Below, in pieces: positions 1,927 to 15,634 of a stretch of DNA of 64,000 nt. The first letter of the stretch is position 1. Each line of letters starts with the position of its first letter. The notes beneath the pieces were generated by a model that was not told the DNA's origin, did no database searches, and was given only the letters and a program-made list of their open reading frames with translations. The stretch is from the sequence record OP292654.1; one strand, given 5' to 3'. A program made the translations under genes and the position numbers.

Positions 1927-2338
1927 GATTATCTGCGGGTTTCCTGGTATTGGTAAAAGTACTGTAGTACAGAACAATGATAAAGTAATTGACTTAGATA
2001 GTTCTGGCTACAGTAAGATACAAACATTTCCATTGAACTATATTCAGGCTATTATTGATGCTGAGAATGATGGATATGAATATATACTGATCAGTACTCA
2101 TGCATCAGTTAGAAACTTGCTTCAAACACTTGGTATGAAGTATACCAATGTGTATCCTGAAATTGATTTAGGTGAAGAATATATAGAACGTTATAGAGAA
2201 CGTGGTTCTCCAGAAAGTTTTATTAACTTCCTTGAAGAAAATTGGGATGATTTCATCTTCGAATTACAGTATGATGAATCAGATTATATCGAACTTGAAC
2301 CTGGTCAATTTCTTTCAGATGTTTTGAAAAATATTTGA
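1916..2338 (+). CDS. P-loop nucleotide kinase-like protein
   Basis: N-terminal IICGFPGIGKS Walker A followed by IDLDSS. Confidence 0.65.
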   Translation: MAAKIICGFPGIGKSTVVQNNDKVIDLDSSGYSKIQTFPLNYIQAIIDAENDGYEYILISTHASVRNLLQTLGMKYTNVYPEIDLGEEYIERYRERGSPESFINFLEENWDDFIFELQYDESDYIELEPGQFLSDVLKNI

Positions 2339-2347
2339 AAAAAAGAT

Positions 2348-2375
2348 GAAACGATTCAAAAGTTTCTGGTATAAT
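2348..2375 (+). promoter_or_regulatory. GAAACG-N16-TATAAT class promoter
   Basis: GAAACG at 2348, TATAAT at 2370; repeated motif. Confidence 0.7.
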
Positions 2376-2392
2376 ATAGTACATAAGGCAGC

Positions 2393-2514
2393 GGAATCTT
2401 ACAGCAAAAATTAAACCTTTTGATGAAAACAAAACGACGGGGTTCAATTCCCCACCCACGAACATCTGCCTTATTCAAATAGTGGGAGCTTGGTGCTGGA
2501 TAAAAAGAGATTCC
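2393..2514 (+). ncRNA. CAGCAA-family element with permuted tRNA-like module
   Basis: GGAATCT/AGATTCC terminal stem, ACAGCAA, T-arm GGGG-TTCAATT-CCCC, closed acceptor-like CCCAC/GTGGG. Confidence 0.7.
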
Positions 2515-2537
2515 TGAATTTAATTAAGAAAATTTTT

Positions 2538-2565
2538 GAAACGAATCAAAAATTTGTGGTATAAT
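2538..2565 (+). promoter_or_regulatory. GAAACG-N16-TATAAT class promoter
   Basis: GAAACG at 2538, TGTGG-TATAAT at 2560. Confidence 0.7.
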
Positions 2566-2582
2566 AAAAGTATTAGCAACAC

Positions 2583-2698
2583 GAAATCTTACAGCAAACA
2601 AAACAATATTTTTTATGCGAAAAAAACGGTGCGGTTCGAATCCGCAGCAGCCATGTTGCTATGTAGGCTGTGCTTGGGGCCAGAAAAACAAAGATTTC
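2583..2698 (+). ncRNA. CAGCAA-family element with anticodon loop GCG and permuted tRNA-like module
   Basis: GAAATCTT/AAGATTTC stem; TTTTT-AT GCG AA-AAAAA; T-arm TGCGG-TTCGAAT-CCGCA; GCAGCC/GGCTGT acceptor-like stem. Confidence 0.75.
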
Positions 2699-2723
2699 AG
2701 TTTCCTCAAACAAGGATAACAAA

Positions 2724-2882
2724 ATGGCATCAGCAGAAGAAAACATGGTAATTGTTCGTAAAATCCTTAGTGGAATTGACAACAATAACCTTCCTGAAGT
2801 AATGTCTGAATTAGGTTTTGAAGTGACAAAGAGTACAGAAAAAAGTACAGAATGGTCATTGAAAGAATCTGAACAAACATAA
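2724..2882 (+). CDS. small hypothetical protein
   Basis: AAGGA RBS before ATG 2724 (track ORF start overlaps the ncRNA). Confidence 0.55.
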   Translation: MASAEENMVIVRKILSGIDNNNLPEVMSELGFEVTKSTEKSTEWSLKESEQT

Positions 2883-2884
2883 TT

Positions 2885-2956
2885 GTTCCCATCGTCTATC
2901 GGTTAGGACGCCTCCCTTTCAAGGAGGAAAGCGGAGTTCGATTCTCCGTGGGAACG
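2885..2956 (+). tRNA. trnE: tRNA-Glu(TTC)
   Basis: full cloverleaf, CCTCC-CT TTC AA-GGAGG, TTCGATT T-loop; CCA not encoded. Confidence 0.95.
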
Positions 2957-2960
2957 CTAA

Positions 2961-3066
2961 AAGAATCGTCCAGCAAACATAACTCTTTATATTTCATTTG
3001 GCGAAAAACACCTTCGGTTCGAATCCGATTTACCACTGGCTGTGGGGATAGAAAACAACGATTCTT
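2961..3066 (+). ncRNA. CAGCAA-family element with anticodon loop TTG and T-arm
   Basis: AAGAATCGT/ACGATTCTT stem; TTTC-AT TTG GC-GAAA; TCGG-TTCGAAT-CCGA; CCAC/GTGG. Confidence 0.75.
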
Positions 3067-3094
3067 GTCTTTTAATTAAACCGAATTAGCACTC

Positions 3095-3250
3095 GGATTC
3101 TGACAGCAACACATAAAATCTTAAAATCTATCAAATAATGAGATTGGATACTCGGACGTAAAACTCCCTTCGTGTCCACCTGGTAACTAGGGAGATAATA
3201 ATTAGTTATATTGAGCCGTGCTAGGTAGTTGCTCAATTAATAGAGAATCC
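3095..3250 (+). ncRNA. CAGCAA-family element, long divergent cargo
   Basis: GGATTCT/AGAATCC stem followed by GACAGCAA; about 135-nt interior without a clear T-arm. Confidence 0.5.
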
Positions 3251-3291
3251 AGCGTACAAAGTACTTAAATCCTATTGGACAGTACTTTTTT

Positions 3292-3384
3292 GGAAGATTG
3301 GCAGAGCTTGGCTTATTGTACCTGACTTGAAATCAGGCGGGGGTTAATAGCCCTCCGTGGGTTCGAATCCCACATCTTCCTCCA
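3292..3384 (+). tRNA. trnS: tRNA-Ser(TGA)
   Basis: cloverleaf with long variable arm, CCTGA-CT TGA AA-TCAGG, encoded CCA. Confidence 0.95.
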
Positions 3385-3392
3385 AAATTTAT

Positions 3393-3514
3393 GAGAAAGT
3401 AGCTCAGTTGGTAGAGCAGGTAGAAACCCAAAATTACAGTACTGTAATTTCGCAGCAACCATACTTCATCCACTTTTAATGGCCTGGTCGTTGGTTCGAG
3501 TCCAACCTTTCTCG
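3393..3514 (+). tRNA. trnK: tRNA-Lys(TTT) interrupted by a 49-nt insertion (3421-3469)
   Basis: removing 3421-3469 gives a perfect cloverleaf: GAGAAAG/CTTTCTC, GGCCA-CT TTT AA-TGGCC, GTTGG-TTCGAGT-CCAAC. Confidence 0.85.
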
Positions 3515-3516
3515 CA

Positions 3517-3577
3517 TAGAATCTAACAGCAAACATATTCTTATTCAATTGGTGAAAACAAAGATTATAGATTCTAG
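3517..3577 (+). ncRNA. CAGCAA-family minimal element (loop AA TTG GT)
   Basis: TAGAATCTA/TAGATTCTA stem, ACAGCAA, TTC-AATTGGT-GAAAAC. Confidence 0.7.
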
Positions 3578-3630
3578 TTTTTAATTTAGTTTAAAAATAC
3601 TAAATAAAGTTGAAGCCATTCAACAAACAT

Positions 3631-3727
3631 GGTAAAGTGGCAGAGCTTGGCTTATCGCAGTCGCCTGGAAAGCGGCCAGGTTAGGTAATCCCTAGCCTCG
3701 GAGGTTCAAATCCTCTCTTTACCGCCA
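3631..3727 (+). tRNA. trnS: tRNA-Ser(GGA)
   Basis: cloverleaf, long variable arm, CT GGA AA loop, encoded CCA. Confidence 0.93.
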
Positions 3728-3746
3728 ATACACACAAGGAAGAAAA

Positions 3747-3962
3747 ATGTTTTACGATTATTACTACAAAGTAGATGGTGCTTTGCGTCGTCATACTAGT
3801 GCTGAAGAATTGAATGACGAACAAGTTAGCAATATCTTCGGAGCACAAAAATCAGTAGTTCTACTTGAGCCAGTAGTTTTTGAACGTGAAGTTCAAGACG
3901 AAGAAACCAAGAAGAAAAGTACTGTTAAAGAACACGTTGGCTATATCGGCTACGTAGAATAA
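3747..3962 (+). CDS. hypothetical protein
   Basis: AAGGA RBS. Confidence 0.65.
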   Translation: MFYDYYYKVDGALRRHTSAEELNDEQVSNIFGAQKSVVLLEPVVFEREVQDEETKKKSTVKEHVGYIGYVE

Positions 3963-3969
3963 AAGAATT

Positions 3970-4028
3970 TGGAATCCTCCAGCAACCACACAAAAACTCA
4001 AACTTTTACTTTGACTATGTGGATTCCA
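3970..4028 (+). ncRNA. CAGCAA-family minimal element with Lys(TTT)-type anticodon stem-loop
   Basis: TGGAATCC/GGATTCCA stem, CCAGCAA, TCAAA-CT TTT AC-TTTGA. Confidence 0.75.
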
Positions 4029-4045
4029 GTATTAATTGAGAGATA

Positions 4046-4276
4046 ATGATTATGGATAATCAACATAAACAAATTAAAGGGTATCGAGACTTGAATCAGC
4101 AAGAAATTAATGCGATGAACGCAATTAAGGACTTGGCTGCTAAAGTGGGCGATATGATCGACGCACTTGAAGATCATCCTGATATTGATAAACGTTGGCT
4201 GGCTATAGCTAAGACTGACCTACAGAAAGGTTTCATGTCGGCAGTACGGAGCGTAGCAAAACCGGATTCATTCTAA
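4046..4276 (+). CDS. acb2: anti-CBASS cyclic-nucleotide sponge Acb2 homologue
   Basis: MDNQHKQIKGYRDL..EI..MN.IK ... RWLAIAKTDLQKGFM...R..AKPDSF closely resembles my recollection of the Acb2/Vs.4 family N- and C-terminal motifs. Confidence 0.85.
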   Translation: MIMDNQHKQIKGYRDLNQQEINAMNAIKDLAAKVGDMIDALEDHPDIDKRWLAIAKTDLQKGFMSAVRSVAKPDSF

Positions 4277-4744
4277 ATGAGCAAATACGATGTGTTATAC
4301 GAAATTGGAGAAGAATATTTCATTTCGTTATTACATACGCCGGAACGATGTAGATCAACTATTGATGGATTATCTAATACCGTGAATTTTAATGTAAATG
4401 ATCATTATTCTTCACGAGACGGGGTAATCCATTTTTATTTGTCGGACGAAAAGGAAAACACCTTTTCAGTTGTTGTTGACTTGTTAGCTAACAGGTTCAG
4501 CGTACACTACTGGAGCGATGATGACGATATTGATACTGACATATTCAAGGTCAATAAACTCCCTTACAATATTAGTGAGGAATGGCATTTCCAGTTGAGT
4601 ACTAAAGCAGAATTTCCGTTCAGTTATGAATTCATAACACGGTTACGCGAGTTCGTTAAGTACTTCGAAGATATGATGAATGTTAATCATAGCATAGACG
4701 CACTTAGGGAACATCATAACATTGTACCATATCCTTGTAGGTGA
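4277..4744 (+). CDS. hypothetical protein, EE-x-FQ-x-[ST] paralog family
   Basis: SEEWHFQLST motif shared with 9865, 10248, 17279, 17797. Confidence 0.7.
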   Translation: MSKYDVLYEIGEEYFISLLHTPERCRSTIDGLSNTVNFNVNDHYSSRDGVIHFYLSDEKENTFSVVVDLLANRFSVHYWSDDDDIDTDIFKVNKLPYNISEEWHFQLSTKAEFPFSYEFITRLREFVKYFEDMMNVNHSIDALREHHNIVPYPCR

Positions 4745-4748
4745 TATT

Positions 4749-4985
4749 ATGGAAACCATCGTAGATGAAATCCTGAATAGTGCTAATATGCACGAAGCTG
4801 TTCGTAAGTTTGTAGACGCAAACGAACGTTCAAATAATATTGATTTGTACCAAGCACTGACTTATGTGTTCTTTGAAATGGATGAAAAAGATCCTCGCTT
4901 CGAAGAACTGAACGATGTACTTGACGCAATGAGTGGTCATTGTAACAAAGCATGTTACATCGGCACTGGTGATTATGCCTGGTAA
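4749..4985 (+). CDS. hypothetical protein
   Basis: AGGTG RBS before ATG 4749. Confidence 0.65.
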   Translation: METIVDEILNSANMHEAVRKFVDANERSNNIDLYQALTYVFFEMDEKDPRFEELNDVLDAMSGHCNKACYIGTGDYAW

Positions 4986-4997
4986 CAGGCATTAAAT

Positions 4998-5070
4998 GGG
5001 AATATAATTCAGTTGGTAGAATGCTCGACCGATAATCGAGTCGTCGCTGGTTCGAGTCCAGCTATTCCCA
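4998..5070 (+). tRNA. trnI: tRNA-Ile(GAT)
   Basis: cloverleaf GGGAATA/TATTCCC, CTCGA-CC GAT AA-TCGAG. Confidence 0.9.
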
Positions 5071-5154
5071 CTAAGTAGTACTGTGAAATTATCCAACACA
5101 ATAGGTAGCACTTTGGATGAATCAGTAAGCCTATATCGTACTACAAATAAATTA

Positions 5155-5290
5155 AAGAATTCAACAGCAACTAAATGTTAACCCAAATAGCGGCCTTATG
5201 GCGTGTAGGTTCGAGTCCTACGATCTATGTCAGTACGAATAGTGATGGTGAAATAGGTAGACACGGCTATCCAATAAACGATGAATTCTT
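5155..5290 (+). ncRNA. CAGCAA-family element with circularly permuted class II (Leu-like) tRNA body
   Basis: AAGAATTCA/TGAATTCTT stem; 3' half (ATAGC, variable hairpin GCC-TTAT-GGC, GTAGG-TTCGAGT-CCTAC) precedes 5' half (GGTGAAATAGGTAGACAC D-arm, GCTAT). Confidence 0.75.
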
Positions 5291-5308
5291 GTATTAATTT
5301 GGAAAAAT

Positions 5309-5569
5309 ATGGATATTTTATACGCTAAAGTAACTGAGCTTAATGCTGGTTACGAAGGTGATCGAATAAACGCAAAAGCGTTAGACCCGGATCATTACTA
5401 CGTTGTTAGTTATGTTGATATGGGAAGTTCTAGTACTTCAATATACTTAGAAAATGACCGTAAATCATATAACTCTGTAAATTTTACTTTCTACACTATT
5501 GTTGACGGTAAACATAAAGAGTACAACATATTCAGTGACCCGAATTATAATCCGTACCTTAACCTATAA
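5309..5569 (+). CDS. hypothetical protein
   Basis: ORF with GGA RBS. Confidence 0.65.
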   Translation: MDILYAKVTELNAGYEGDRINAKALDPDHYYVVSYVDMGSSSTSIYLENDRKSYNSVNFTFYTIVDGKHKEYNIFSDPNYNPYLNL

Positions 5570-5578
5570 AGGTGATAT

Positions 5579-5719
5579 ATGTCAGGCAACGCACATAGCT
5601 CTAAACGTAACGACCATAGTTATGAAACGCTGAATCGCAATAATCCGCATCATTCGCGTCGTAATGACCATAGTTACGAAACCCTGAATCGTAATAACCC
5701 GCATCAACCTAAACGTTAA
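5579..5719 (+). CDS. 46-aa micropeptide with duplicated RNDHSYETLNRNNPH motif
   Basis: AAAGGTG RBS; 54-bp-period direct repeat differing mainly at synonymous positions. Confidence 0.65.
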   Translation: MSGNAHSSKRNDHSYETLNRNNPHHSRRNDHSYETLNRNNPHQPKR

Positions 5720-5736
5720 TGCGTTAGTAACAAATT

Positions 5737-5851
5737 TGGAATTTAACAGCAATCACTTTCTATCACGCAGCATGTCGCAGGTTCGAGTCCTGTCAGTACT
5801 AGTACTGTAGCTCAGTTGGGAGAGCAGCCGCCTAAAACGAAATAAATTCCA
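5737..5851 (+). ncRNA. CAGCAA-family element with circularly permuted tRNA-Asp-like body (anticodon ATC)
   Basis: TGGAATTTA/TAAATTCCA stem; CT ATC AC-GCAGC-ATGTC-GCAGG-TTCGAGT-CCTGT-CAGTACT then AGTACTG-TA-GCTC AGTTGGGA GAGC-A-GCCGC. Confidence 0.8.
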
Positions 5852-5974
5852 GTCTTAATCAAATTCACCAGGCGTACTATGGTGTGATACGGATAGCATG
5901 TTATCCTATAAGGTCAGAATAGAATACGTATTAGTCTCTTGAAAAGACTTCTGTAAACTCAATTTGTACTCATT

Positions 5975-6029
5975 TAGAATCTACCAGCAATTAAAACTTC
6001 TCGGATATAGAAAACAAAAATAGATTCTA
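5975..6029 (+). ncRNA. CAGCAA-family minimal element (loop CG GAT AT)
   Basis: TAGAATCTA/TAGATTCTA stem, CCAGCAA, TTCT-CGGATAT-AGAA AAC. Confidence 0.7.
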
Positions 6030-6053
6030 GCTTTAATTGAATAAAACCGGATT

Positions 6054-6115
6054 TGGAATCCAGCAGCAACCATAAATGAACTCAACTGTTAATTGAAAAC
6101 TCAAAATGGATTCCA
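6054..6115 (+). ncRNA. CAGCAA-family minimal element with Asn(GTT)-type anticodon stem-loop
   Basis: TGGAATCCA/TGGATTCCA stem, GCAGCAA, TCAA-CT GTT AA-TTGA AAAC. Confidence 0.8.
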
Positions 6116-6132
6116 GTATTTTTAAGTGAAAT

Positions 6133-6633
6133 ATGAGCAGAAAACTTGAAATTGATAATCGTGTAGTTCAGGAAATGATTTCACGAGGAAGTACTATTCA
6201 GCAAATAGCTAATACATGTAACGTATCAGCAACAACGATGAAAAAGTATTTCAAAGATTTGAGTTTAAAAACTCACACAATGATTCAACGTGAATCTTCA
6301 ATATGTTTAAAACACAATATTGAATTTTCACAACGAACAGACGGCAAACGTGTATGTATGAAATGTAATTCTGAAGGAGTTACAGAACATCGTAAACGAT
6401 TAAAGATAAAAGCCGTTGAATATCTTGGTGGTAAATGTGAACGATGCGGATATGATAAATCAATAGCTGCGTTAGACTTCCATCATAAAGACCCAAGTCA
6501 GAAAGATTTTGGAATTTCAGATGAAGGTGTTACCCGTTCATGGGAAGTTATTCAAAGTGAATTAGACAAATGTATGTTAGTTTGTGCTAATTGTCATCGA
6601 GAAATTCATGAAGAACTTAATTTAGAAAATTAA
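6133..6633 (+). CDS. HNH homing endonuclease
   Basis: GGKCERCGY...ALDFHHKDP...CMLVCANCHREIH; N-terminal HTH-like segment. Confidence 0.85.
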   Translation: MSRKLEIDNRVVQEMISRGSTIQQIANTCNVSATTMKKYFKDLSLKTHTMIQRESSICLKHNIEFSQRTDGKRVCMKCNSEGVTEHRKRLKIKAVEYLGGKCERCGYDKSIAALDFHHKDPSQKDFGISDEGVTRSWEVIQSELDKCMLVCANCHREIHEELNLEN

Positions 6634-6643
6634 GAAAAAAGAT

Positions 6644-6671
6644 GAAACGCCACAAGAAATTGTGGTATAAT
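6644..6671 (+). promoter_or_regulatory. GAAACG-N16-TATAAT class promoter
   Basis: GAAACG 6644, TGTGG-TATAAT 6666, upstream of tRNA-Asn. Confidence 0.7.
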
Positions 6672-6690
6672 ATAAGTAAGAAAAACAAAA

Positions 6691-6762
6691 GGTTGTGTCG
6701 TATAAAGGTTATTACGGAGAGCTGTTAACTCTTTTATCTTGGTTCGATTCCAAGCATAACCG
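6691..6762 (+). tRNA. trnN: tRNA-Asn(GTT)
   Basis: cloverleaf, GAGAG-CT GTT AA-CTCTT. Confidence 0.92.
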
Positions 6763-6810
6763 CAAAGTGATGTTTGGGCGGTTTGATAATATATAAATCC
6801 AAACAGAACA

Positions 6811-6856
6811 AAGAATCTTCCAGCAATTAAAACGGTTGAATAATATATAGATTCTT
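6811..6856 (+). ncRNA. CAGCAA-family minimal element
   Basis: AAGAATCT/AGATTCTT stem, CCAGCAA; short interior with only a weak hairpin. Confidence 0.6.
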
Positions 6857-6860
6857 GATT

Positions 6861-6936
6861 AGGCTCATGGTGTAATTGGCTAACACACCGGATTTTGATT
6901 CCGGCATTCTAGGTTCGAGTCCTAGTGGGCCTGCCA
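6861..6936 (+). tRNA. trnQ: tRNA-Gln(TTG)
   Basis: cloverleaf, CCGGA-TT TTG AT-TCCGG, encoded CCA. Confidence 0.95.
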
Positions 6937-7081
6937 ATTTAAAGATTTCATCACTTCCTGTGTGAAACAAGCTGGTATTTCCCCCTGCTTGTAAAATTAT
7001 CGAAAGGGAACCGAGTAGCACCTGTACAGGTCAGTTCGTAAAGAACAAGTATGTACAGTACTGACAGCGGCAGTACAACCT

Positions 7082-7154
7082 GCGAGTATCATATAGAGGC
7101 TTAATATGCTGTCCTTCCAAGTCGGTCACATCGGTTCGAATCCGATTACTCGCT
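7082..7154 (+). tRNA. trnG: tRNA-Gly(TCC)
   Basis: GCGAGTA/TACTCGC acceptor, CT TCC AA loop, one anticodon-stem mismatch. Confidence 0.88.
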
Positions 7155-7281
7155 CAGATTAAGTAAACAAACAAACAAAAAGGTAAATCCTATGATGCTA
7201 TAGAAATTCAGTACTGGTCCACCGGATAAAGTTAATTCAGAACAAAACACTAAATTAATTACTATCCAAAAGGAACATACT

Positions 7282-7608
7282 ATGTTGACCAAAGAACAAT
7301 TCATTACTGTAACAACAACCTGGAAACTTGAAAAAGAGCATACTGTACACGAGCATATTATCTATAATATTCTTCGGGGTAAGTCGGCTGATGAAGGTTT
7401 CGTGCCATTGACTGATTGGGGTCGCCTACATGCGAGTCAAAACAATCCTTGGTTTAACTATGACAATGCGATTCTTGAATTGCGTTACCGCTTGAATGAA
7501 AAGCGTTATGGTTATGAAGGTACAGTAAAACATTATTCCGAAGTTTTCGGCATTGATTTTACACCGGACTTAGTTGCTGCTATCGTCGCAGAACTTAAGA
7601 CCAAATAA
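7282..7608 (+). CDS. hypothetical protein
   Basis: AAGGA RBS. Confidence 0.7.
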   Translation: MLTKEQFITVTTTWKLEKEHTVHEHIIYNILRGKSADEGFVPLTDWGRLHASQNNPWFNYDNAILELRYRLNEKRYGYEGTVKHYSEVFGIDFTPDLVAAIVAELKTK

Positions 7609-7614
7609 CAAATT

Positions 7615-7678
7615 TAGAATCTAACAGCAAACACTATTTTATTTCACTTATCTTGAAAACCGAAAATAATAGATTCTA
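7615..7678 (+). ncRNA. CAGCAA-family minimal element with anticodon-like loop TAT
   Basis: TAGAATCTA/TAGATTCTA stem, ACAGCAA, TTCA-CT TAT CT-TGAA AAC. Confidence 0.75.
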
Positions 7679-7693
7679 GTCTTTATTCTCAAA

Positions 7694-7960
7694 ATGAGGA
7701 AAACTGATATGGCACGTGAGTTTATGCACTTTGCTTACTTCAAAGAAGTAACCAAAATGGAGCAAGCAAAATCTGGTATTAAACCACTAGAAATAGAAGA
7801 TTTTGCGAACCAAATCGAAGAAATGGTTCAAAAGATGATCGATGCTGGTGAAGATGAAGGTATGTTTCGTATAACTTTACCTGATAACTTACCGCCAGAA
7901 AAAGCAGTTGAGTTCATTGACGAAGTTATGCGTCGTCTAAATGATCGTTTCGGTGGATAA
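7694..7960 (+). CDS. hypothetical protein
   Basis: ORF in co-directional run. Confidence 0.6.
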   Translation: MRKTDMAREFMHFAYFKEVTKMEQAKSGIKPLEIEDFANQIEEMVQKMIDAGEDEGMFRITLPDNLPPEKAVEFIDEVMRRLNDRFGG

Positions 7961-13277: not shown

Positions 13278-13351
13278 ATAGTAGTAAGTCAATTGGTAAC
13301 GACTCCCTATTAAGATTAGGAGAATGTGTGGTTCAAATCCCTCCTACTATT
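13278..13351 (+). pseudogene. degenerate tRNA-like gene, anticodon AAG
   Basis: ATAGTAG/CTACTAT acceptor, AGTC/GACT D-arm, CCTA-TT AAG AT-TAGG; T-stem largely mispaired. Confidence 0.6.
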
Positions 13352-13360
13352 AAGTACTAT

Positions 13361-13433
13361 GCCTCGTTAGCTCAGTTGGTAGAGCATCCGACTTTTAATC
13401 GGAGTGTCACTGGTTCAAGCCCAGTACGGGGTA
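13361..13433 (+). tRNA. trnK: tRNA-Lys(TTT)
   Basis: cloverleaf, TCCGA-CT TTT AA-TCGGA. Confidence 0.95.
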
Positions 13434-13450
13434 CTAACTTTGAGGTACAT

Positions 13451-15553: not shown

Positions 15554-15634
15554 GAGTATATAGCTTAATTATAGAGCAGCGATTTTAACAGGTAATGCTG
15601 GTCGTCAGTGTAGGTGGAACCCCTATTATACTCA
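15554..15634 (+). pseudogene. tRNA-like element with expanded (17-nt) anticodon loop and altered T-loop
   Basis: GAGTATA/TATACTC acceptor, GCTT/GAGC D-arm, GCGAT/GTCGT stem, GTAGG-TGGAACC-CCTAT. Confidence 0.6.

What the first reader, a model, noticed from the sequence alone, without database searches (positions are those of the whole stretch)
3393..3514. tRNA-Lys(UUU) split by a 49-nt insertion that is the CAGCAA element opened the other way
Seen: deleting 3421-3469 (TAGAAACCCA-AAATTACAGTACTGTAATTT-CGCAGCAACCATACTTCAT) restores a perfect tRNA with GGCCA/TGGCC anticodon stem. The junction between tRNA positions 28 and 29 is unambiguous. The insert holds the family's 3' motif (TAGAAAC), then a perfect 20-nt palindrome standing in for the terminal stem, then CAGCAA. 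It is therefore the circular permutation of the standalone elements. It is far too short for a group I/II intron, and 28/29 is not the canonical 37/38 site. Inference: either a protein-spliced mini-intron in a phage tRNA or a deliberately non-decoding tRNA mimic. An uninterrupted Lys(UUU) exists at 13361.
Basis: partly seen in the sequence, partly recalled or inferred. Interest (0 to 1): 0.88.

Follow-up and report, generated by a model that had tools for sequence, protein, structure and literature searches.

The report
Phage tRNA carrying a Y-RNA arm
A jumbo-phage lysine tRNA gene has a conserved 49-base arm inside its anticodon stem, built from the same module as small tRNA-mimicking "Y-like" RNAs that sit next to a Ro60-like protein gene in other phages; this points to an undescribed phage RNA-protein system, or possibly a new kind of tRNA intron.

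Summary
Window 3393-3514 (Xanthomonas phage XbC2) is a tRNA-Lys(UUU) interrupted between positions 28 and 29 by 49 nt (3421-3469). It is not an accident: I collected 19 non-redundant split tRNAs (Lys, Glu, Asn-like, Pro-like, Ile-like) from the GAP32/BF jumbo phages, KVP40-like vibriophages and unrelated viral contigs. All 95 anticodon-stem pairs spanning the insert are Watson-Crick, across 11 different stems. The insert has a fixed anatomy: an A-rich arm usually starting UA, a hairpin, a CAGCAA box, and a 9-12 nt spacer usually ending AU. The "standalone CAGCAA elements" (12 in the window, 64 in six phages) carry the same module opened at the hairpin. Several enclose tRNA-like cargo that matches Rfam YrlA below its gathering score. 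In four unrelated contigs these RNAs, or split tRNAs, lie directly upstream of a DUF2828 gene. A predicted DUF2828 structure matches only Ro60/Rsr. XbC2 encodes this protein beside an RNA ligase and a 2H phosphoesterase. Best reading: a tRNA/Y-RNA hybrid with a Ro-like-binding arm. A true protein-spliced mini-intron remains a serious rival. I found no paper describing any of this.

The parts
3393..3420 (+). tRNA-Lys(UUU) 5' part, tRNA positions 1-28: acceptor 5' strand, D arm, and G27 G28 of the anticodon stem.
   Evidence: The acceptor stem covaries with GAP32 (GAGAAAG/CTTTCTC against GGGAAAG/CTTTCCC).
3421..3430 (+). Insert, 5' arm UAGAAACCCA. It is A-rich and begins with UA.
   Evidence: The insert begins with UA in 17 of 19 split tRNAs.
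3431..3450 (+). Insert hairpin P1: AAATTACA-gtac-TGTAATTT, a 20-nt palindrome. It corresponds to the outer stem of the standalone elements.
   Evidence: RNAalifold predicts P1 independently, with compensatory changes.
3451..3458 (+). Linker CG plus the conserved box CAGCAA (3453-3458).
   Evidence: The box is present in 15 of 19 split tRNAs (variants CCGCAA, CCGCAC, CGGCAT) and in all 64 outward elements.
3459..3469 (+). 11-nt spacer CCAUACUUCAU, ending in AU at the junction.
   Evidence: The spacer is 9-12 nt with a mode of 11. The insert ends in AU in 14 of 19 genes.
3470..3514 (+). tRNA-Lys 3' part, positions 29-73: CCA of the anticodon stem, loop CUUUUAA, UGGCC, variable loop, T arm, acceptor 3' strand and discriminator G.
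3517..3576 (+). Outward-facing copy of the module, 3 nt downstream of the tRNA (TAGAATCTA a CAGCAA ... GAAAAC ... TAGATTCTA). The pairing of a split tRNA with an outward element recurs in GAP32, CBB, Kaldavass, L024 and L136.
   Evidence: The covariance model R1 scores it at 61.6 bits.
2393..2514 (+). Outward module enclosing a T-arm and a short acceptor-like hairpin. It has its own extended -10 promoter upstream.
2583..2698 (+). Outward module enclosing a T-arm and an acceptor-like hairpin, with its own promoter.
2961..3066 (+). Outward module with a T-arm cargo, directly after tRNA-Glu.
   Evidence: R1 gives E=9e-5.
3095..3250 (+). Long outward module (outer stem GGATTCT/AGAATCC) with a 134-nt interior that has no T-arm. 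It is conserved in all six phages.
3969..4029 (+). Short outward module.
   Evidence: 49.3 bits.
5155..5290 (+). Outward module enclosing a long-arm (Leu-like D arm) permuted tRNA-like cargo.
5736..5852 (+). Outward module enclosing a YrlA-like tRNA mimic: T arm, loop-closed acceptor hairpin, D arm and anticodon-stem base.
   Evidence: Rfam YrlA scores 41.9 bits with E=6e-7 over model positions 24-84. Orthologues covary.
5974..6030 (+). Short outward module: box, 11-nt spacer, 6-nt loop, UAGAAAAC.
6053..6116 (+). Short outward module.
6811..6856 (+). Shortest outward module (46 nt).
7614..7679 (+). Short outward module.
   Evidence: 68.9 bits.
13361..13434 (+). Uninterrupted paralogous tRNA-Lys(UUU). 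It differs from the split gene in every stem.

Best explanation
The 49-nt insert is a copy of the stem-plus-box module shared by a family of phage Y-RNA-like small RNAs. Here the module has been grafted into the anticodon stem of an old paralogue of tRNA-Lys(UUU).

The primary transcript folds as a normal tRNA body with a free acceptor end. A 2+3 bp split anticodon stem still presents a canonical CUUUUAA loop. An extra arm projects from position 28/29. The arm consists of an A-rich strand, hairpin P1, and a single-stranded CAGCAA box with spacer.

I infer that this arm is the docking site for the phage's Ro60-like DUF2828 protein, in the way that the stem of a Y RNA docks Ro60/Rsr. On this reading the gene makes a tRNA/Y-RNA hybrid. 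It would link the Ro-like protein, and the RNA ligase and 2H phosphoesterase encoded beside it, to something that reads a tRNA-Lys shape and anticodon loop. Candidates are an anticodon nuclease, a synthetase or a repair enzyme. The RNA would not be an ordinary decoder.

Shown: the homology of the insert with the outward elements; its conservation and covariation; the genomic linkage of the outward elements to Ro-like genes; and the Ro60 fold of DUF2828.

Inferred: that the protein binds the arm; that the arm stays in the mature RNA; and what the resulting particle does.
For: 1. Same module in two topologies. GAATCTTA-CAGCAA occurs both as the hairpin 3' arm inside the split tRNAs of BF and CBB and as the outer stem of the standalone elements. 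Twelve outward copies lie in the window and 64 in six phages, with 24 distinct covarying outer stems.

2. Outward copies with tRNA-like cargo match Rfam YrlA. Window 5770-5828 gives E=6e-7. L022 gives full-model matches at E=5e-7 and 9e-4.

3. Synteny with Ro-like genes in four unrelated contigs.
- L136 reads split Pro-like tRNA, split tRNA-Lys, outward module, then the Ro-like gene.
- L022 has modules just upstream of its Ro-like gene.
- L157 and L160 have several modules in the gap upstream of the gene.
- CAGCAA density is 1-5 per kb in the upstream kilobase against 0-0.5 per kb elsewhere in each locus.
- The covariance model trained only on XbC2-group copies finds elements in D479 (E=3e-4) and L022 (E=0.005 and 0.012).

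4. DUF2828 is a Ro60 homologue by fold. The only two significant PDB matches are Ro60 1yvr (E=7e-9) and Rsr 2nvo (E=4e-7).

5. XbC2 and all relatives encode this protein. In XbC2 it lies beside an RNA ligase (PF09414) and a 2H phosphoesterase.

6. Some members cannot yield an anticodon loop, yet keep the tRNA body and the module. In VH7D_b and D479_3 the module replaces the loop. CBB locus A has a degenerate arm.

7. Split tRNAs are always second copies of isoacceptors that the phage also encodes intact. The discriminator base varies between G and A among orthologues, whereas the intact Lys genes have A73.
Against: - No binding data exist.
- The published Rsr-binding motif GNCGAAN0-1G (PMC4201824) is absent. 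The box here is CNGCAA.
- In XbC2 the Ro-like gene is about 200 kb from the tRNA region, so linkage is shown only in other phages.
- DUF2828 occurs in 711 phage records. I did not test whether all of them have the module.
- The features expected of a spliced intron are strikingly present. There is a perfect 5-bp stem once the insert is removed, in 11 different sequences. The loop is a canonical 7 nt, with U33 and R37 in 11 of the 13 clean cases. Orthologues switch anticodon (UUU, GAU, UUC) while keeping that form. The junctions are regular (G|UA ... AU|N). Several copies encode CCA.
- An RNA with a 49-nt branch in the anticodon stem has no known precedent among functional tRNAs.
Confidence: 0.48

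Rival explanations
1. True protein-dependent mini-intron. The arm is a recognition handle, possibly still bound by the Ro-like protein. An endonuclease cuts at G28|UA and at AU|N29, about 11 nt 3' of the box. The two tRNA halves stay paired, which leaves a nick in the anticodon-stem duplex. The phage's Rnl2-family ligase seals the nick after end healing by the 2H phosphoesterase and a kinase. The product is a decoding tRNA-Lys. In outward topology the same signal would act as an intercistronic processing site, or would flank permuted tRNA genes. That would parallel the way archaeal BHB motifs work in introns, rRNA precursors and permuted tRNAs.
For: - In 13 of 18 genes tested, excision after position 28 is the unique or near-unique way to restore a perfect 5-bp Watson-Crick anticodon stem and a 7-nt loop. 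In 11 of those 13 the loop also has U33 and R37.
- Across the 19 non-redundant genes, 95 of 95 stem cells are Watson-Crick, in 11 distinct stems.
- Where the insertion point moves to 29/30 (L128), the split becomes 3+2 and the total stays at 5 bp.
- Orthologues at one locus carry UUU, GAU or UUC with canonical loops.
- The junctions are regular: UA at the start in 17 of 19, AU at the end in 14 of 19, G28 in 17 of 19, and a modal spacer of 11 nt.
- CCA is encoded after several copies.
- One L022 outward element would give a canonical arm (ACG|GC-CTATGGA-GCCGT) if joined at the equivalent junction.
- The ligase is PF09414, the Rnl2-type family, and a 2H phosphoesterase lies beside it. A nick in duplex RNA is the preferred Rnl2 substrate (established knowledge).
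Against: - No endonuclease has been identified.
- There is no BHB motif.
- The spacer (9-12 nt) and the junction dinucleotides are not invariant.
- VH7D_b cannot give U33 for any junction. The window's YrlA-like element (5736-5852) gives no conserved anticodon among orthologues.
- The short outward elements have only a 6-8 nt 'cargo', so cleavage there would release nothing useful.
- Split tRNAs are always redundant with intact isoacceptors.
- The heal-and-seal genes are equally well explained by repair of nuclease-cut tRNAs.
Confidence: 0.37
2. Dead or selfish insertion. A mobile copy of the CAGCAA element landed in a spare tRNA-Lys gene. The interrupted gene is a non-functional pseudogene carried along by the phage.
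For: - Annotators call relatives 'tRNA-Pseudo', 'tRNA-OTHER' or 'tRNA-Undet'.
- CBB locus A and VH7D_a have non-canonical anticodon arms.
- The split genes are redundant with intact ones.
Against: - Exons are identical between XbC2 and Kaldavass while the insert has 5 substitutions.
- Compensatory changes occur in the acceptor, T and anticodon stems and in the insert hairpin across many lineages.
- The insertion site is the same in tRNAs of different identity, in GAP32-like phages, KVP40-like phages and unrelated contigs.
- A pseudogene would not keep 95 of 95 Watson-Crick pairs.
Confidence: 0.05
3. Self-cleaving or self-splicing small ribozyme. The box and the A-rich strand form a catalytic core that removes the insert without protein.
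For: - Circular permutation of one motif is typical of small ribozymes such as hammerhead and twister types.
- The element lies in a phage tRNA cluster, where such ribozymes are known to occur.
Against: - No ribozyme family matches, even at E<=10.
- Apart from CNGCAA nothing is invariant. The 5' arm varies freely (UAGAAAC, UAGAACC, UAAGAAAAC, AAAAAAACC, UAUUAAUAAA). The interior of the outward copies ranges from 22 to 134 nt.
- The pre-tRNA fold is only modestly more stable than shuffles (z = -2.1).
Confidence: 0.04
4. DNA-level element: a miniature inverted-repeat transposon, a recombination site or a protein operator, with no role as RNA.
For: The standalone copies have terminal inverted repeats with a conserved GAATC core. 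Each arm is itself nearly palindromic.
Against: - The two arms change together so that pairing is preserved (AAGAATCGT/ACGATTCTT, TGGAATTTA/TAAATTCCA, AGGATTCG/CGAATCCT, GGATTTAT/ATAAATCC). This selects for a stem, not for two protein sites.
- All copies are on the transcribed strand, some behind their own promoters.
- The cargo is tRNA-shaped.
Confidence: 0.02

Closest known systems
Bacterial and phage Y-RNA-like RNAs (YrlA, Rfam RF02553) with Ro60/Rsr, often in rsr-yrlA-rtcB RNA-repair operons (Chen et al. 2014, PMC4201824)
   Same: - Modular RNA: a terminal stem with a short conserved single-stranded motif near its 5' strand, plus a tRNA-like domain (T arm, D arm, acceptor-like stem).
- The genes lie next to a Ro60-type protein gene (L022, L136, L157, L160).
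- An RNA ligase lies in the same neighbourhood in XbC2 and pEa50.
- Partial or full-length sub-threshold matches to the YrlA model.
   Different: - The protein is DUF2828, a Ro60 homologue detectable only by fold.
- The motif is CNGCAA, not GNCGAAN0-1G.
- There are 10-14 copies per genome.
- Uniquely, the stem module is also found inverted inside genuine tRNAs that keep a free acceptor end and a canonical anticodon hairpin.
Archaeal and eukaryal protein-spliced tRNA introns (bulge-helix-bulge), including non-canonical positions, split and circularly permuted tRNA genes (for example Cyanidioschyzon merolae)
   Same: - Short introns of about 45-50 nt that can sit inside stems.
- One motif is used both in intron topology and in permuted topology.
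- The cloverleaf is restored exactly on excision.
- Ligation would need a heal-and-seal or RtcB-type ligase.
   Different: - No BHB can be drawn here.
- The hosts are bacterial viruses.
- No EndA-type endonuclease is known.
- The insertion site is fixed (28/29), not scattered.
- Splicing has not been demonstrated.
Phage T4 tRNA repair (PrrC anticodon nuclease versus Pnkp and Rnl1) and phage Rnl2 nick-sealing ligases (T4, KVP40)
   Same: - tRNA-Lys(UUU) is the focus.
- The phage encodes an RNA ligase and an end-healing phosphoesterase.
- A break at 28/29 would be a nick in duplex RNA, which is the Rnl2-type substrate.
   Different: T4 repairs host tRNA that has been cut in the anticodon loop. 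No inserted arm or Ro-like protein is involved.
Group I introns in bacterial and phage tRNA anticodon loops
   Same: An interrupted tRNA gene in a bacterial-type system.
   Different: Group I introns are over 200 nt with a P1-P9 catalytic core, and they sit in the anticodon loop. Here the insert is 43-53 nt, has no such core, and sits in the stem.

Membership tests
tRNA (Rfam RF00005) | Cloverleaf with acceptor, D, anticodon and T arms that scores above the family threshold. | tested here: met
   The score is 46.1 bits against a gathering score of 29 for 3393-3514, with the insert treated as an insertion. Stems covary across 19 genes.
tRNA (functional decoder) | A continuous 5-bp anticodon stem in the mature RNA. 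| not testable with these tools
   The gene encodes a stem interrupted by 49 nt. Whether the mature RNA is joined needs RNA data.
Y-RNA-like (YrlA, RF02553) | tRNA-like domain (T arm, closed acceptor-like stem, D arm) that scores above the family threshold. | tested here: inconclusive
   Window 5770-5828 scores 41.9 bits with E=6e-7, but covers only model positions 24-84. L022 scores 45.6 and 34.3 bits over the full model. All are below the gathering score of 69. The split tRNA-Lys itself has an open acceptor end, not a closed one.
Y-RNA-like (YrlA) | Rsr-binding motif GNCGAAN0-1G near the 5' end (PMC4201824). | tested here: not met
   The equivalent position carries CAGCAA, with variants CCGCAA, CGGCAT and CTGCAA.
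Y-RNA-like (YrlA) | Encoded adjacent to a Ro60 orthologue. | tested here: met
   Met in L022, L136, L157 and L160. Not met in the window's own genome, where the Ro-like gene is about 200 kb away.
Y-RNA-like (YrlA) | A Ro60-type protein (TROVE-like helical repeats plus vWA) encoded by the same genome. | tested here: met
   XbC2_180 contains DUF2828 and DUF7788. A model of a 99%-identical protein matches only Ro60 1yvr (E=7e-9, TM 0.59) and Rsr 2nvo.
Y-RNA-like (YrlA) | Physical binding of the RNA stem by the Ro protein. | not testable with these tools
   This needs gel-shift or immunoprecipitation experiments.
BHB-type (archaeal/eukaryal) tRNA intron | Two 3-nt bulges separated by a 4-bp helix, formed between the intron 5' part and the start of exon 2. 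| tested here: not met
   The intron 5' end UAGAAACC has no complement to the exon-2 start CCAC/CACU. The only recurrent pairing is a 2-3 bp helix between the two intron ends, and its support is weak (37 of 57 cells against 29.4 for permuted partners).
BHB-type tRNA intron | EndA-family splicing endonuclease present. | not tested
   I did not scan the whole phage proteome. None is annotated in the regions I read.
Group I intron | A catalytic core of 200 nt or more (P3-P9), usually inserted in the anticodon loop. | tested here: not met
   The insert is 49 nt and lies in the stem. There is no Rfam intron match.
Small self-cleaving ribozymes (hammerhead, twister, pistol, hatchet, hairpin) | An invariant catalytic core recognised by the family model. 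| tested here: not met
   No match up to E=10 in 2300-7800. Only the 6-nt box is conserved.

The most novel reading that the evidence does not exclude
Jumbo and T4-like phages possess their own tRNA splicing system. A Y-RNA-like handle bound by a Ro60-like protein marks an insert at position 28/29. A still unknown endonuclease cuts at G|UA and AU|N. An Rnl2-type ligase seals the resulting nick in the anticodon stem. The same signal in outward topology processes permuted tRNA-like genes. This would be a bacterial-virus counterpart of archaeal BHB splicing, and it would give Ro-like proteins and phage Rnl2 a physiological substrate.
Probability: 0.3. Interest if true: 0.95.

Novelty: new variant of a known kind. 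Interest (0 to 1): 0.8.

Why it matters
**An open question becomes testable.** The function of the tRNA-like domain of bacterial Y RNAs, and of Ro60-type proteins in bacteria and phages, is still unknown. Here a Ro-like-linked RNA module is attached to mimics and also to real tRNAs with specific anticodons (Lys, Glu, Asn-like, Pro-like, Ile-like). This suggests the particle works on, or imitates, particular tRNAs, which are frequent targets of anti-phage anticodon nucleases. That idea can be tested directly in laboratory phage-host pairs.

**If the arm is excised.** It would be the first protein-dependent tRNA intron class in the bacterial world. It would also give phage Rnl2-type ligases a natural substrate.

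**Annotation.** Dozens of phage records mis-annotate these genes as pseudo-tRNAs, as tRNA-Phe, tRNA-Ser or tRNA-Undet, or as small ORFs. About 10-14 small-RNA genes per genome are missed altogether.

Tried and rejected
- **ARAGORN on rotated or excised sequences.** It is too permissive, because it tolerates introns and odd arms. I replaced it with a strict 17-nt-arm enumeration.
- **Known ribozymes or introns.** Rfam found nothing at gathering thresholds or at E<=10.
- **Sigma-70 promoter reading of TTAGAA...** There is no consistent -10 element, so I rejected it by inspection of the copies.
- **Transposon or operator reading of the inverted repeats.** Rejected because the arms change together.
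- **BHB motif.** It cannot be drawn.
- **A fixed 'P2' helix at the intron ends.** It is only weakly above the permuted control, so I keep it as tentative.
- **Sequence search of DUF2828 against PDB.** No hit. The fold search was needed instead.
- **Split-tRNA-Lys pattern in 185,579 bacterial and archaeal genomes.** There were 19 hits, all without tRNA context and at the number expected by chance.
- **A loose 6-bp outer-stem scan.** It is not specific. I replaced it with box density and a covariance model.
- **D479 'RNA ligase' VPHD479_0394.** It is Acb1, not a ligase.
- **Supplementary tables of the jumbo-phage survey.** They are not held.
- **Literature searches.** Searches for permuted or intron-containing phage tRNAs, for YrlA in these phages and for DUF2828 found nothing describing this.
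- **Structure prediction first attempt.** I re-ran it with a 99%-identical database protein.
Full report
**1. What is in the window**

The window is Xanthomonas phage XbC2, a 368-kb jumbo myovirus of the GAP32/CBB group. Positions 3393-3514 read as follows:

GAGAAAG-TA-GCTC-AGTTGGTA-GAGC-A-GG | TAGAAACCCA-AAATTACAgtacTGTAATTT-CG-CAGCAA-CCATACTTCAT | CCA-CTTTTAA-TGGCC-TGGTC-GTTGG-TTCGAGT-CCAAC-CTTTCTC-G

- Removing 3421-3469 gives a perfect tRNA-Lys(UUU).
- Rfam's tRNA model spans the whole 122 nt at 46.1 bits. ARAGORN misses the gene. GenBank annotates a 122-nt tRNA-Lys.
- I enumerated every single deletion that leaves a 17-nt anticodon arm. 'After position 28' is the only all-Watson-Crick solution.
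- Two details are not general. The heptamer TAGAAAC is not enriched in the window and is already TAGAACC in the closest relative. The perfect 20-nt palindrome shrinks to a 7-bp stem there.

**2. It is conserved and under selection**

The same interrupted gene is found in several places:
- Erwinia phage Kaldavass. Exons are identical and the insert has 5 of 49 substitutions.
- Cronobacter phage GAP32. The gene is unannotated and lies under a spurious small ORF.
- Two ~371-kb metagenomic phages.
- Pectobacterium phage CBB, in a degenerate form.

A second, paralogous split locus exists in Serratia phage BF, the pEa_SNUABM phages, Yersinia phages fHe-Yen9-03/-04, GAP32, CBB and XbC2. It is variously annotated tRNA-Lys, tRNA-Phe, tRNA-OTHER or tRNA-Undet.

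Vibrio phage D479 and the KVP40-like vibriophages belong to a different lineage. They carry the same kind of insert in a Glu(UUC), an Asn-like(GUU) and a Pro-like(AGG) tRNA.

A pattern scan of IMG/VR found 12 genuine split tRNA-Lys genes, including four in unrelated contigs (L128, L132, L133, L136). The same pattern in 185,579 bacterial and archaeal genomes gave only 19 chance matches without tRNA context.

Across 19 non-redundant genes:

| Feature | Result |
|---|---|
| Anticodon-stem pair cells spanning the insert | 95 of 95 Watson-Crick |
| Distinct anticodon stems | 11, with 2-4 pair types per position |
| Acceptor and T stems | covary |
| Insert starts with UA | 17 of 19 |
| Insert ends with AU | 14 of 19 |
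| Position 28 is G | 17 of 19 |
| Box | CAGCAA in 15 of 19 (otherwise CCGCAA, CCGCAC, CGGCAT) |
| Box-to-junction spacer | 9-12 nt, mode 11 |

RNAalifold, run blind on 14 genes, recovers the cloverleaf stems, the insert hairpin and the 3-bp anticodon mini-hairpin. Of its 26 predicted pairs, 18 show compensatory double changes. This rules out a decaying pseudogene.

**3. The 'CAGCAA elements' and the permutation**

In the window, 12 plus-strand elements lie between 2393 and 7679. Each consists of:
- an outer stem, for example UUAGAAUCUA/UAGAUUCUAG;
- 1-2 nt, then CAGCAA;
- a variable interior of 22-134 nt;
- an A-rich strand that leads back into the stem.

Six related phages hold 64 such elements in syntenic positions, with 24 distinct outer stems that change by paired substitutions. 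In BF and CBB the insert hairpin is GATTC...GAATC followed by (T)TA-CAGCAA, identical to the outer-stem-plus-box of the standalone copies.

The short elements have the form box, 11-nt spacer ending CAU, 6-8 nt, UAUGAAAAA, stem. That is the insert with a tiny loop where the tRNA would be.

A covariance model built only from 16 short elements of this phage group:
- recovers long-cargo copies that were not in the training set (2961-3066, E=9e-5; 5737-5851, E=0.013);
- finds a vibriophage copy (E=3e-4);
- finds nothing elsewhere in the 64-kb window.

**4. What the elements are**

Several outward elements enclose tRNA-like cargo. Window 5736-5852 holds a T arm, an acceptor stem closed by a 2-nt loop, a D arm and the base of an anticodon stem. 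Rfam aligns its core to YrlA, the bacterial Y-RNA-like tRNA mimic, at E=6e-7, but only over the tRNA-like domain.

In contig L022, two such elements match the full YrlA model (E=5e-7 and 9e-4, both below the gathering score). They lie immediately upstream of the promoter and start codon of a DUF2828 gene.

In L136 the order on one strand is split Pro-like tRNA, split tRNA-Lys, outward element, ribosome-binding site, DUF2828 gene.

I then fetched three further unrelated DUF2828 genes. All three are preceded by 250-500-nt gene-free gaps. Two of these (L157 and L160) are packed with box-bearing stems, one of which encloses a T arm, an acceptor hairpin and a D arm.

On the gene strand, CAGCAA occurs 5, 2, 1, 5 and 3 times in the kilobase upstream of the five genes, against 0-0.5 per kb elsewhere in the same loci.

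DUF2828 proteins are annotated 'Ro-like RNA-binding protein' in mycobacteriophages. A confident AlphaFold model (pLDDT 85) of a protein 99% identical to XbC2_180 has only two significant PDB neighbours, both aligned over the full length: Xenopus Ro60 (E=7e-9, TM 0.59) and Deinococcus Rsr (E=4e-7).

XbC2 and every relative encode this protein. In XbC2 it lies between an RNA ligase (PF09414, the Rnl2-type family, with an OB domain) and a 2H phosphoesterase. D479 and the KVP40-like phages encode the protein too.

The published Rsr-binding motif of YrlA, GNCGAAN0-1G (PMC4201824), is not present. The phage box CNGCAA occupies the equivalent place.

**5. How it most likely works**

Shown:
- the insert is the Y-like stem-and-box module;
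- it is conserved and structured;
- the module family is genomically linked to a Ro60 homologue.

Inferred: the arm docks the Ro-like protein.

The open question is whether the arm stays or is cut out.

*For a retained arm (tRNA/Y-RNA hybrid):*
- The same module is plainly not an intron in its 10-14 outward copies per genome.
- In D479_3 and VH7D_b the module replaces the anticodon loop, and VH7D_b cannot yield U33 for any junction.
- CBB's locus-A copy keeps the tRNA body and the module while its anticodon arm has degenerated.
- Split tRNAs are always second copies of isoacceptors that the phage also encodes intact: Lys UUU and Glu UUC in XbC2; Glu, Asn, Lys and Pro in D479.
- The split and intact Lys genes are old paralogues.

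*For excision (a true mini-intron):*
- The stem is perfect only across the insert, in 11 different versions.
- The total stays at 5 bp where the insertion point shifts to 29/30 in L128.
- Loops are a canonical 7 nt, with U33 and R37 in 11 of the 13 clean cases.
- Orthologues at one locus have switched between UUU, GAU and UUC.
- Junction nucleotides are regular.
- Several copies encode CCA.
- Removing an insert from inside a stem would leave a nick in duplex RNA, the classic substrate of Rnl2-type ligases.

I rate the hybrid model at about 0.48 and the intron model at about 0.37. The two are not exclusive as regards Ro-like binding.

The identities of the split tRNAs suggest a link with anticodon-nuclease defences, and these phages encode a heal-and-seal cassette. 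That link is an inference only.

**6. Comparison with known systems**

- **Closest family: Ro60/Rsr with Y-RNA-like tRNA mimics.** The architecture, the synteny and the neighbouring ligase are the same. The protein subfamily and the binding motif differ. What is new is that the stem module is embedded, in inverted topology, in genuine tRNAs.
- **Archaeal and eukaryal BHB introns and permuted tRNA genes.** There is a formal resemblance, because one motif appears in intron and permuted topologies. A BHB cannot be drawn, however, and no endonuclease is known.
- **Not a group I intron or a known ribozyme**.

**7. Novelty**

None of the genome papers for XbC2, CBB or the KVP40 group mentions the insert or the repeat family. 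[quoted passage not shown] Searches for phage tRNA introns, permuted tRNAs, YrlA in these phages and DUF2828 found nothing relevant. I classify the finding as a new variant of a known kind. It would be upgraded if splicing is demonstrated.

Noticed in passing
window 2349-2392 and 2540-2582: Extended -10 promoters (TGGTATAAT) with a TGAAACG-type -35 sit about 25 nt upstream of the first two outward elements. This is the 'divergent RpoD-like' promoter described for CBB and GAP32, so these small RNAs appear to have their own promoters.
   Followed up: partly
window 2385-2392 with 2463-2469, and 2574-2579 with 2655-2660: The leader just upstream of the outer stem is complementary to the loop of the acceptor-like hairpin inside the same element (AAGGCAG/CTGCCTT and AGCAAC/GTTGCT). 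The pairing covaries in Yen9-04 (GGCAA/TTGCC). It could be a pseudoknot or an alternative fold.
   Followed up: partly
window 3095-3250: A long outward element with a flipped outer stem (GGATTCT/AGAATCC) has a 134-nt interior that lacks any T arm. It is conserved in all six phages. The nature of its cargo is unknown.
   Followed up: no
window 13278-13351 and 15554-15634: Two further Rfam tRNA matches (33.6 and 40.8 bits) are not called by ARAGORN. The first lies directly upstream of the intact tRNA-Lys. They may be degenerate or unusual tRNA-like genes.
   Followed up: no
L124 3398-3512 (XbC2 record 299897-300011, just upstream of the window): The gene annotated 'tRNA-Phe (AAA)', 115 nt, is another split gene. 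Its insert follows position 29, its box is CAGCAT, its joined arm is GCGGC-CTTTCAC-GCCGA (only 4 of 5 stem pairs, with a G-A mismatch), and its anticodon is UUC (Glu-like). It is orthologous to split Lys(UUU) genes in BF, GAP32 and CBB and to a GAU version in Yen9-04.
   Followed up: yes
L113 4887-5006 (GAP32_431A) and L110 22194-22472 (Kaldavass CDS0183): Small 'membrane protein' and 'hypothetical protein' ORFs are annotated over the split tRNA-Lys in relatives. They are almost certainly spurious.
   Followed up: partly
L121 18763-19215 (Vibrio phage D479 VPHD479_0394): The gene is annotated 'RNA ligase', but it is an Acb1 anti-CBASS 2H phosphodiesterase by Pfam (E=4e-40).
   Followed up: yes
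CBB record 102737-104248 and pEa_SNUABM_12 record 101508-103031: The Ro-like DUF2828 protein is annotated as a (putative) structural protein in the CBB GenBank record and in pEa_SNUABM_12. If it is packaged in virions, the protein, perhaps with bound RNA, could be delivered at infection.
   Followed up: no
L115 188-311, L136 (reverse strand) 4649-4765, L022 4189-4322, L115 478-593: Several of the unusual tRNAs or mimics would carry A at position 34 (anticodons AGG, AUG, AAU). This is rare in bacterial-type tRNAs.
   Followed up: no
window 6133-6633: An HNH homing-endonuclease gene lies among the outward elements. A similar gene sits next to the second split-tRNA locus in Yen9-04 and pEa50.
   Followed up: no
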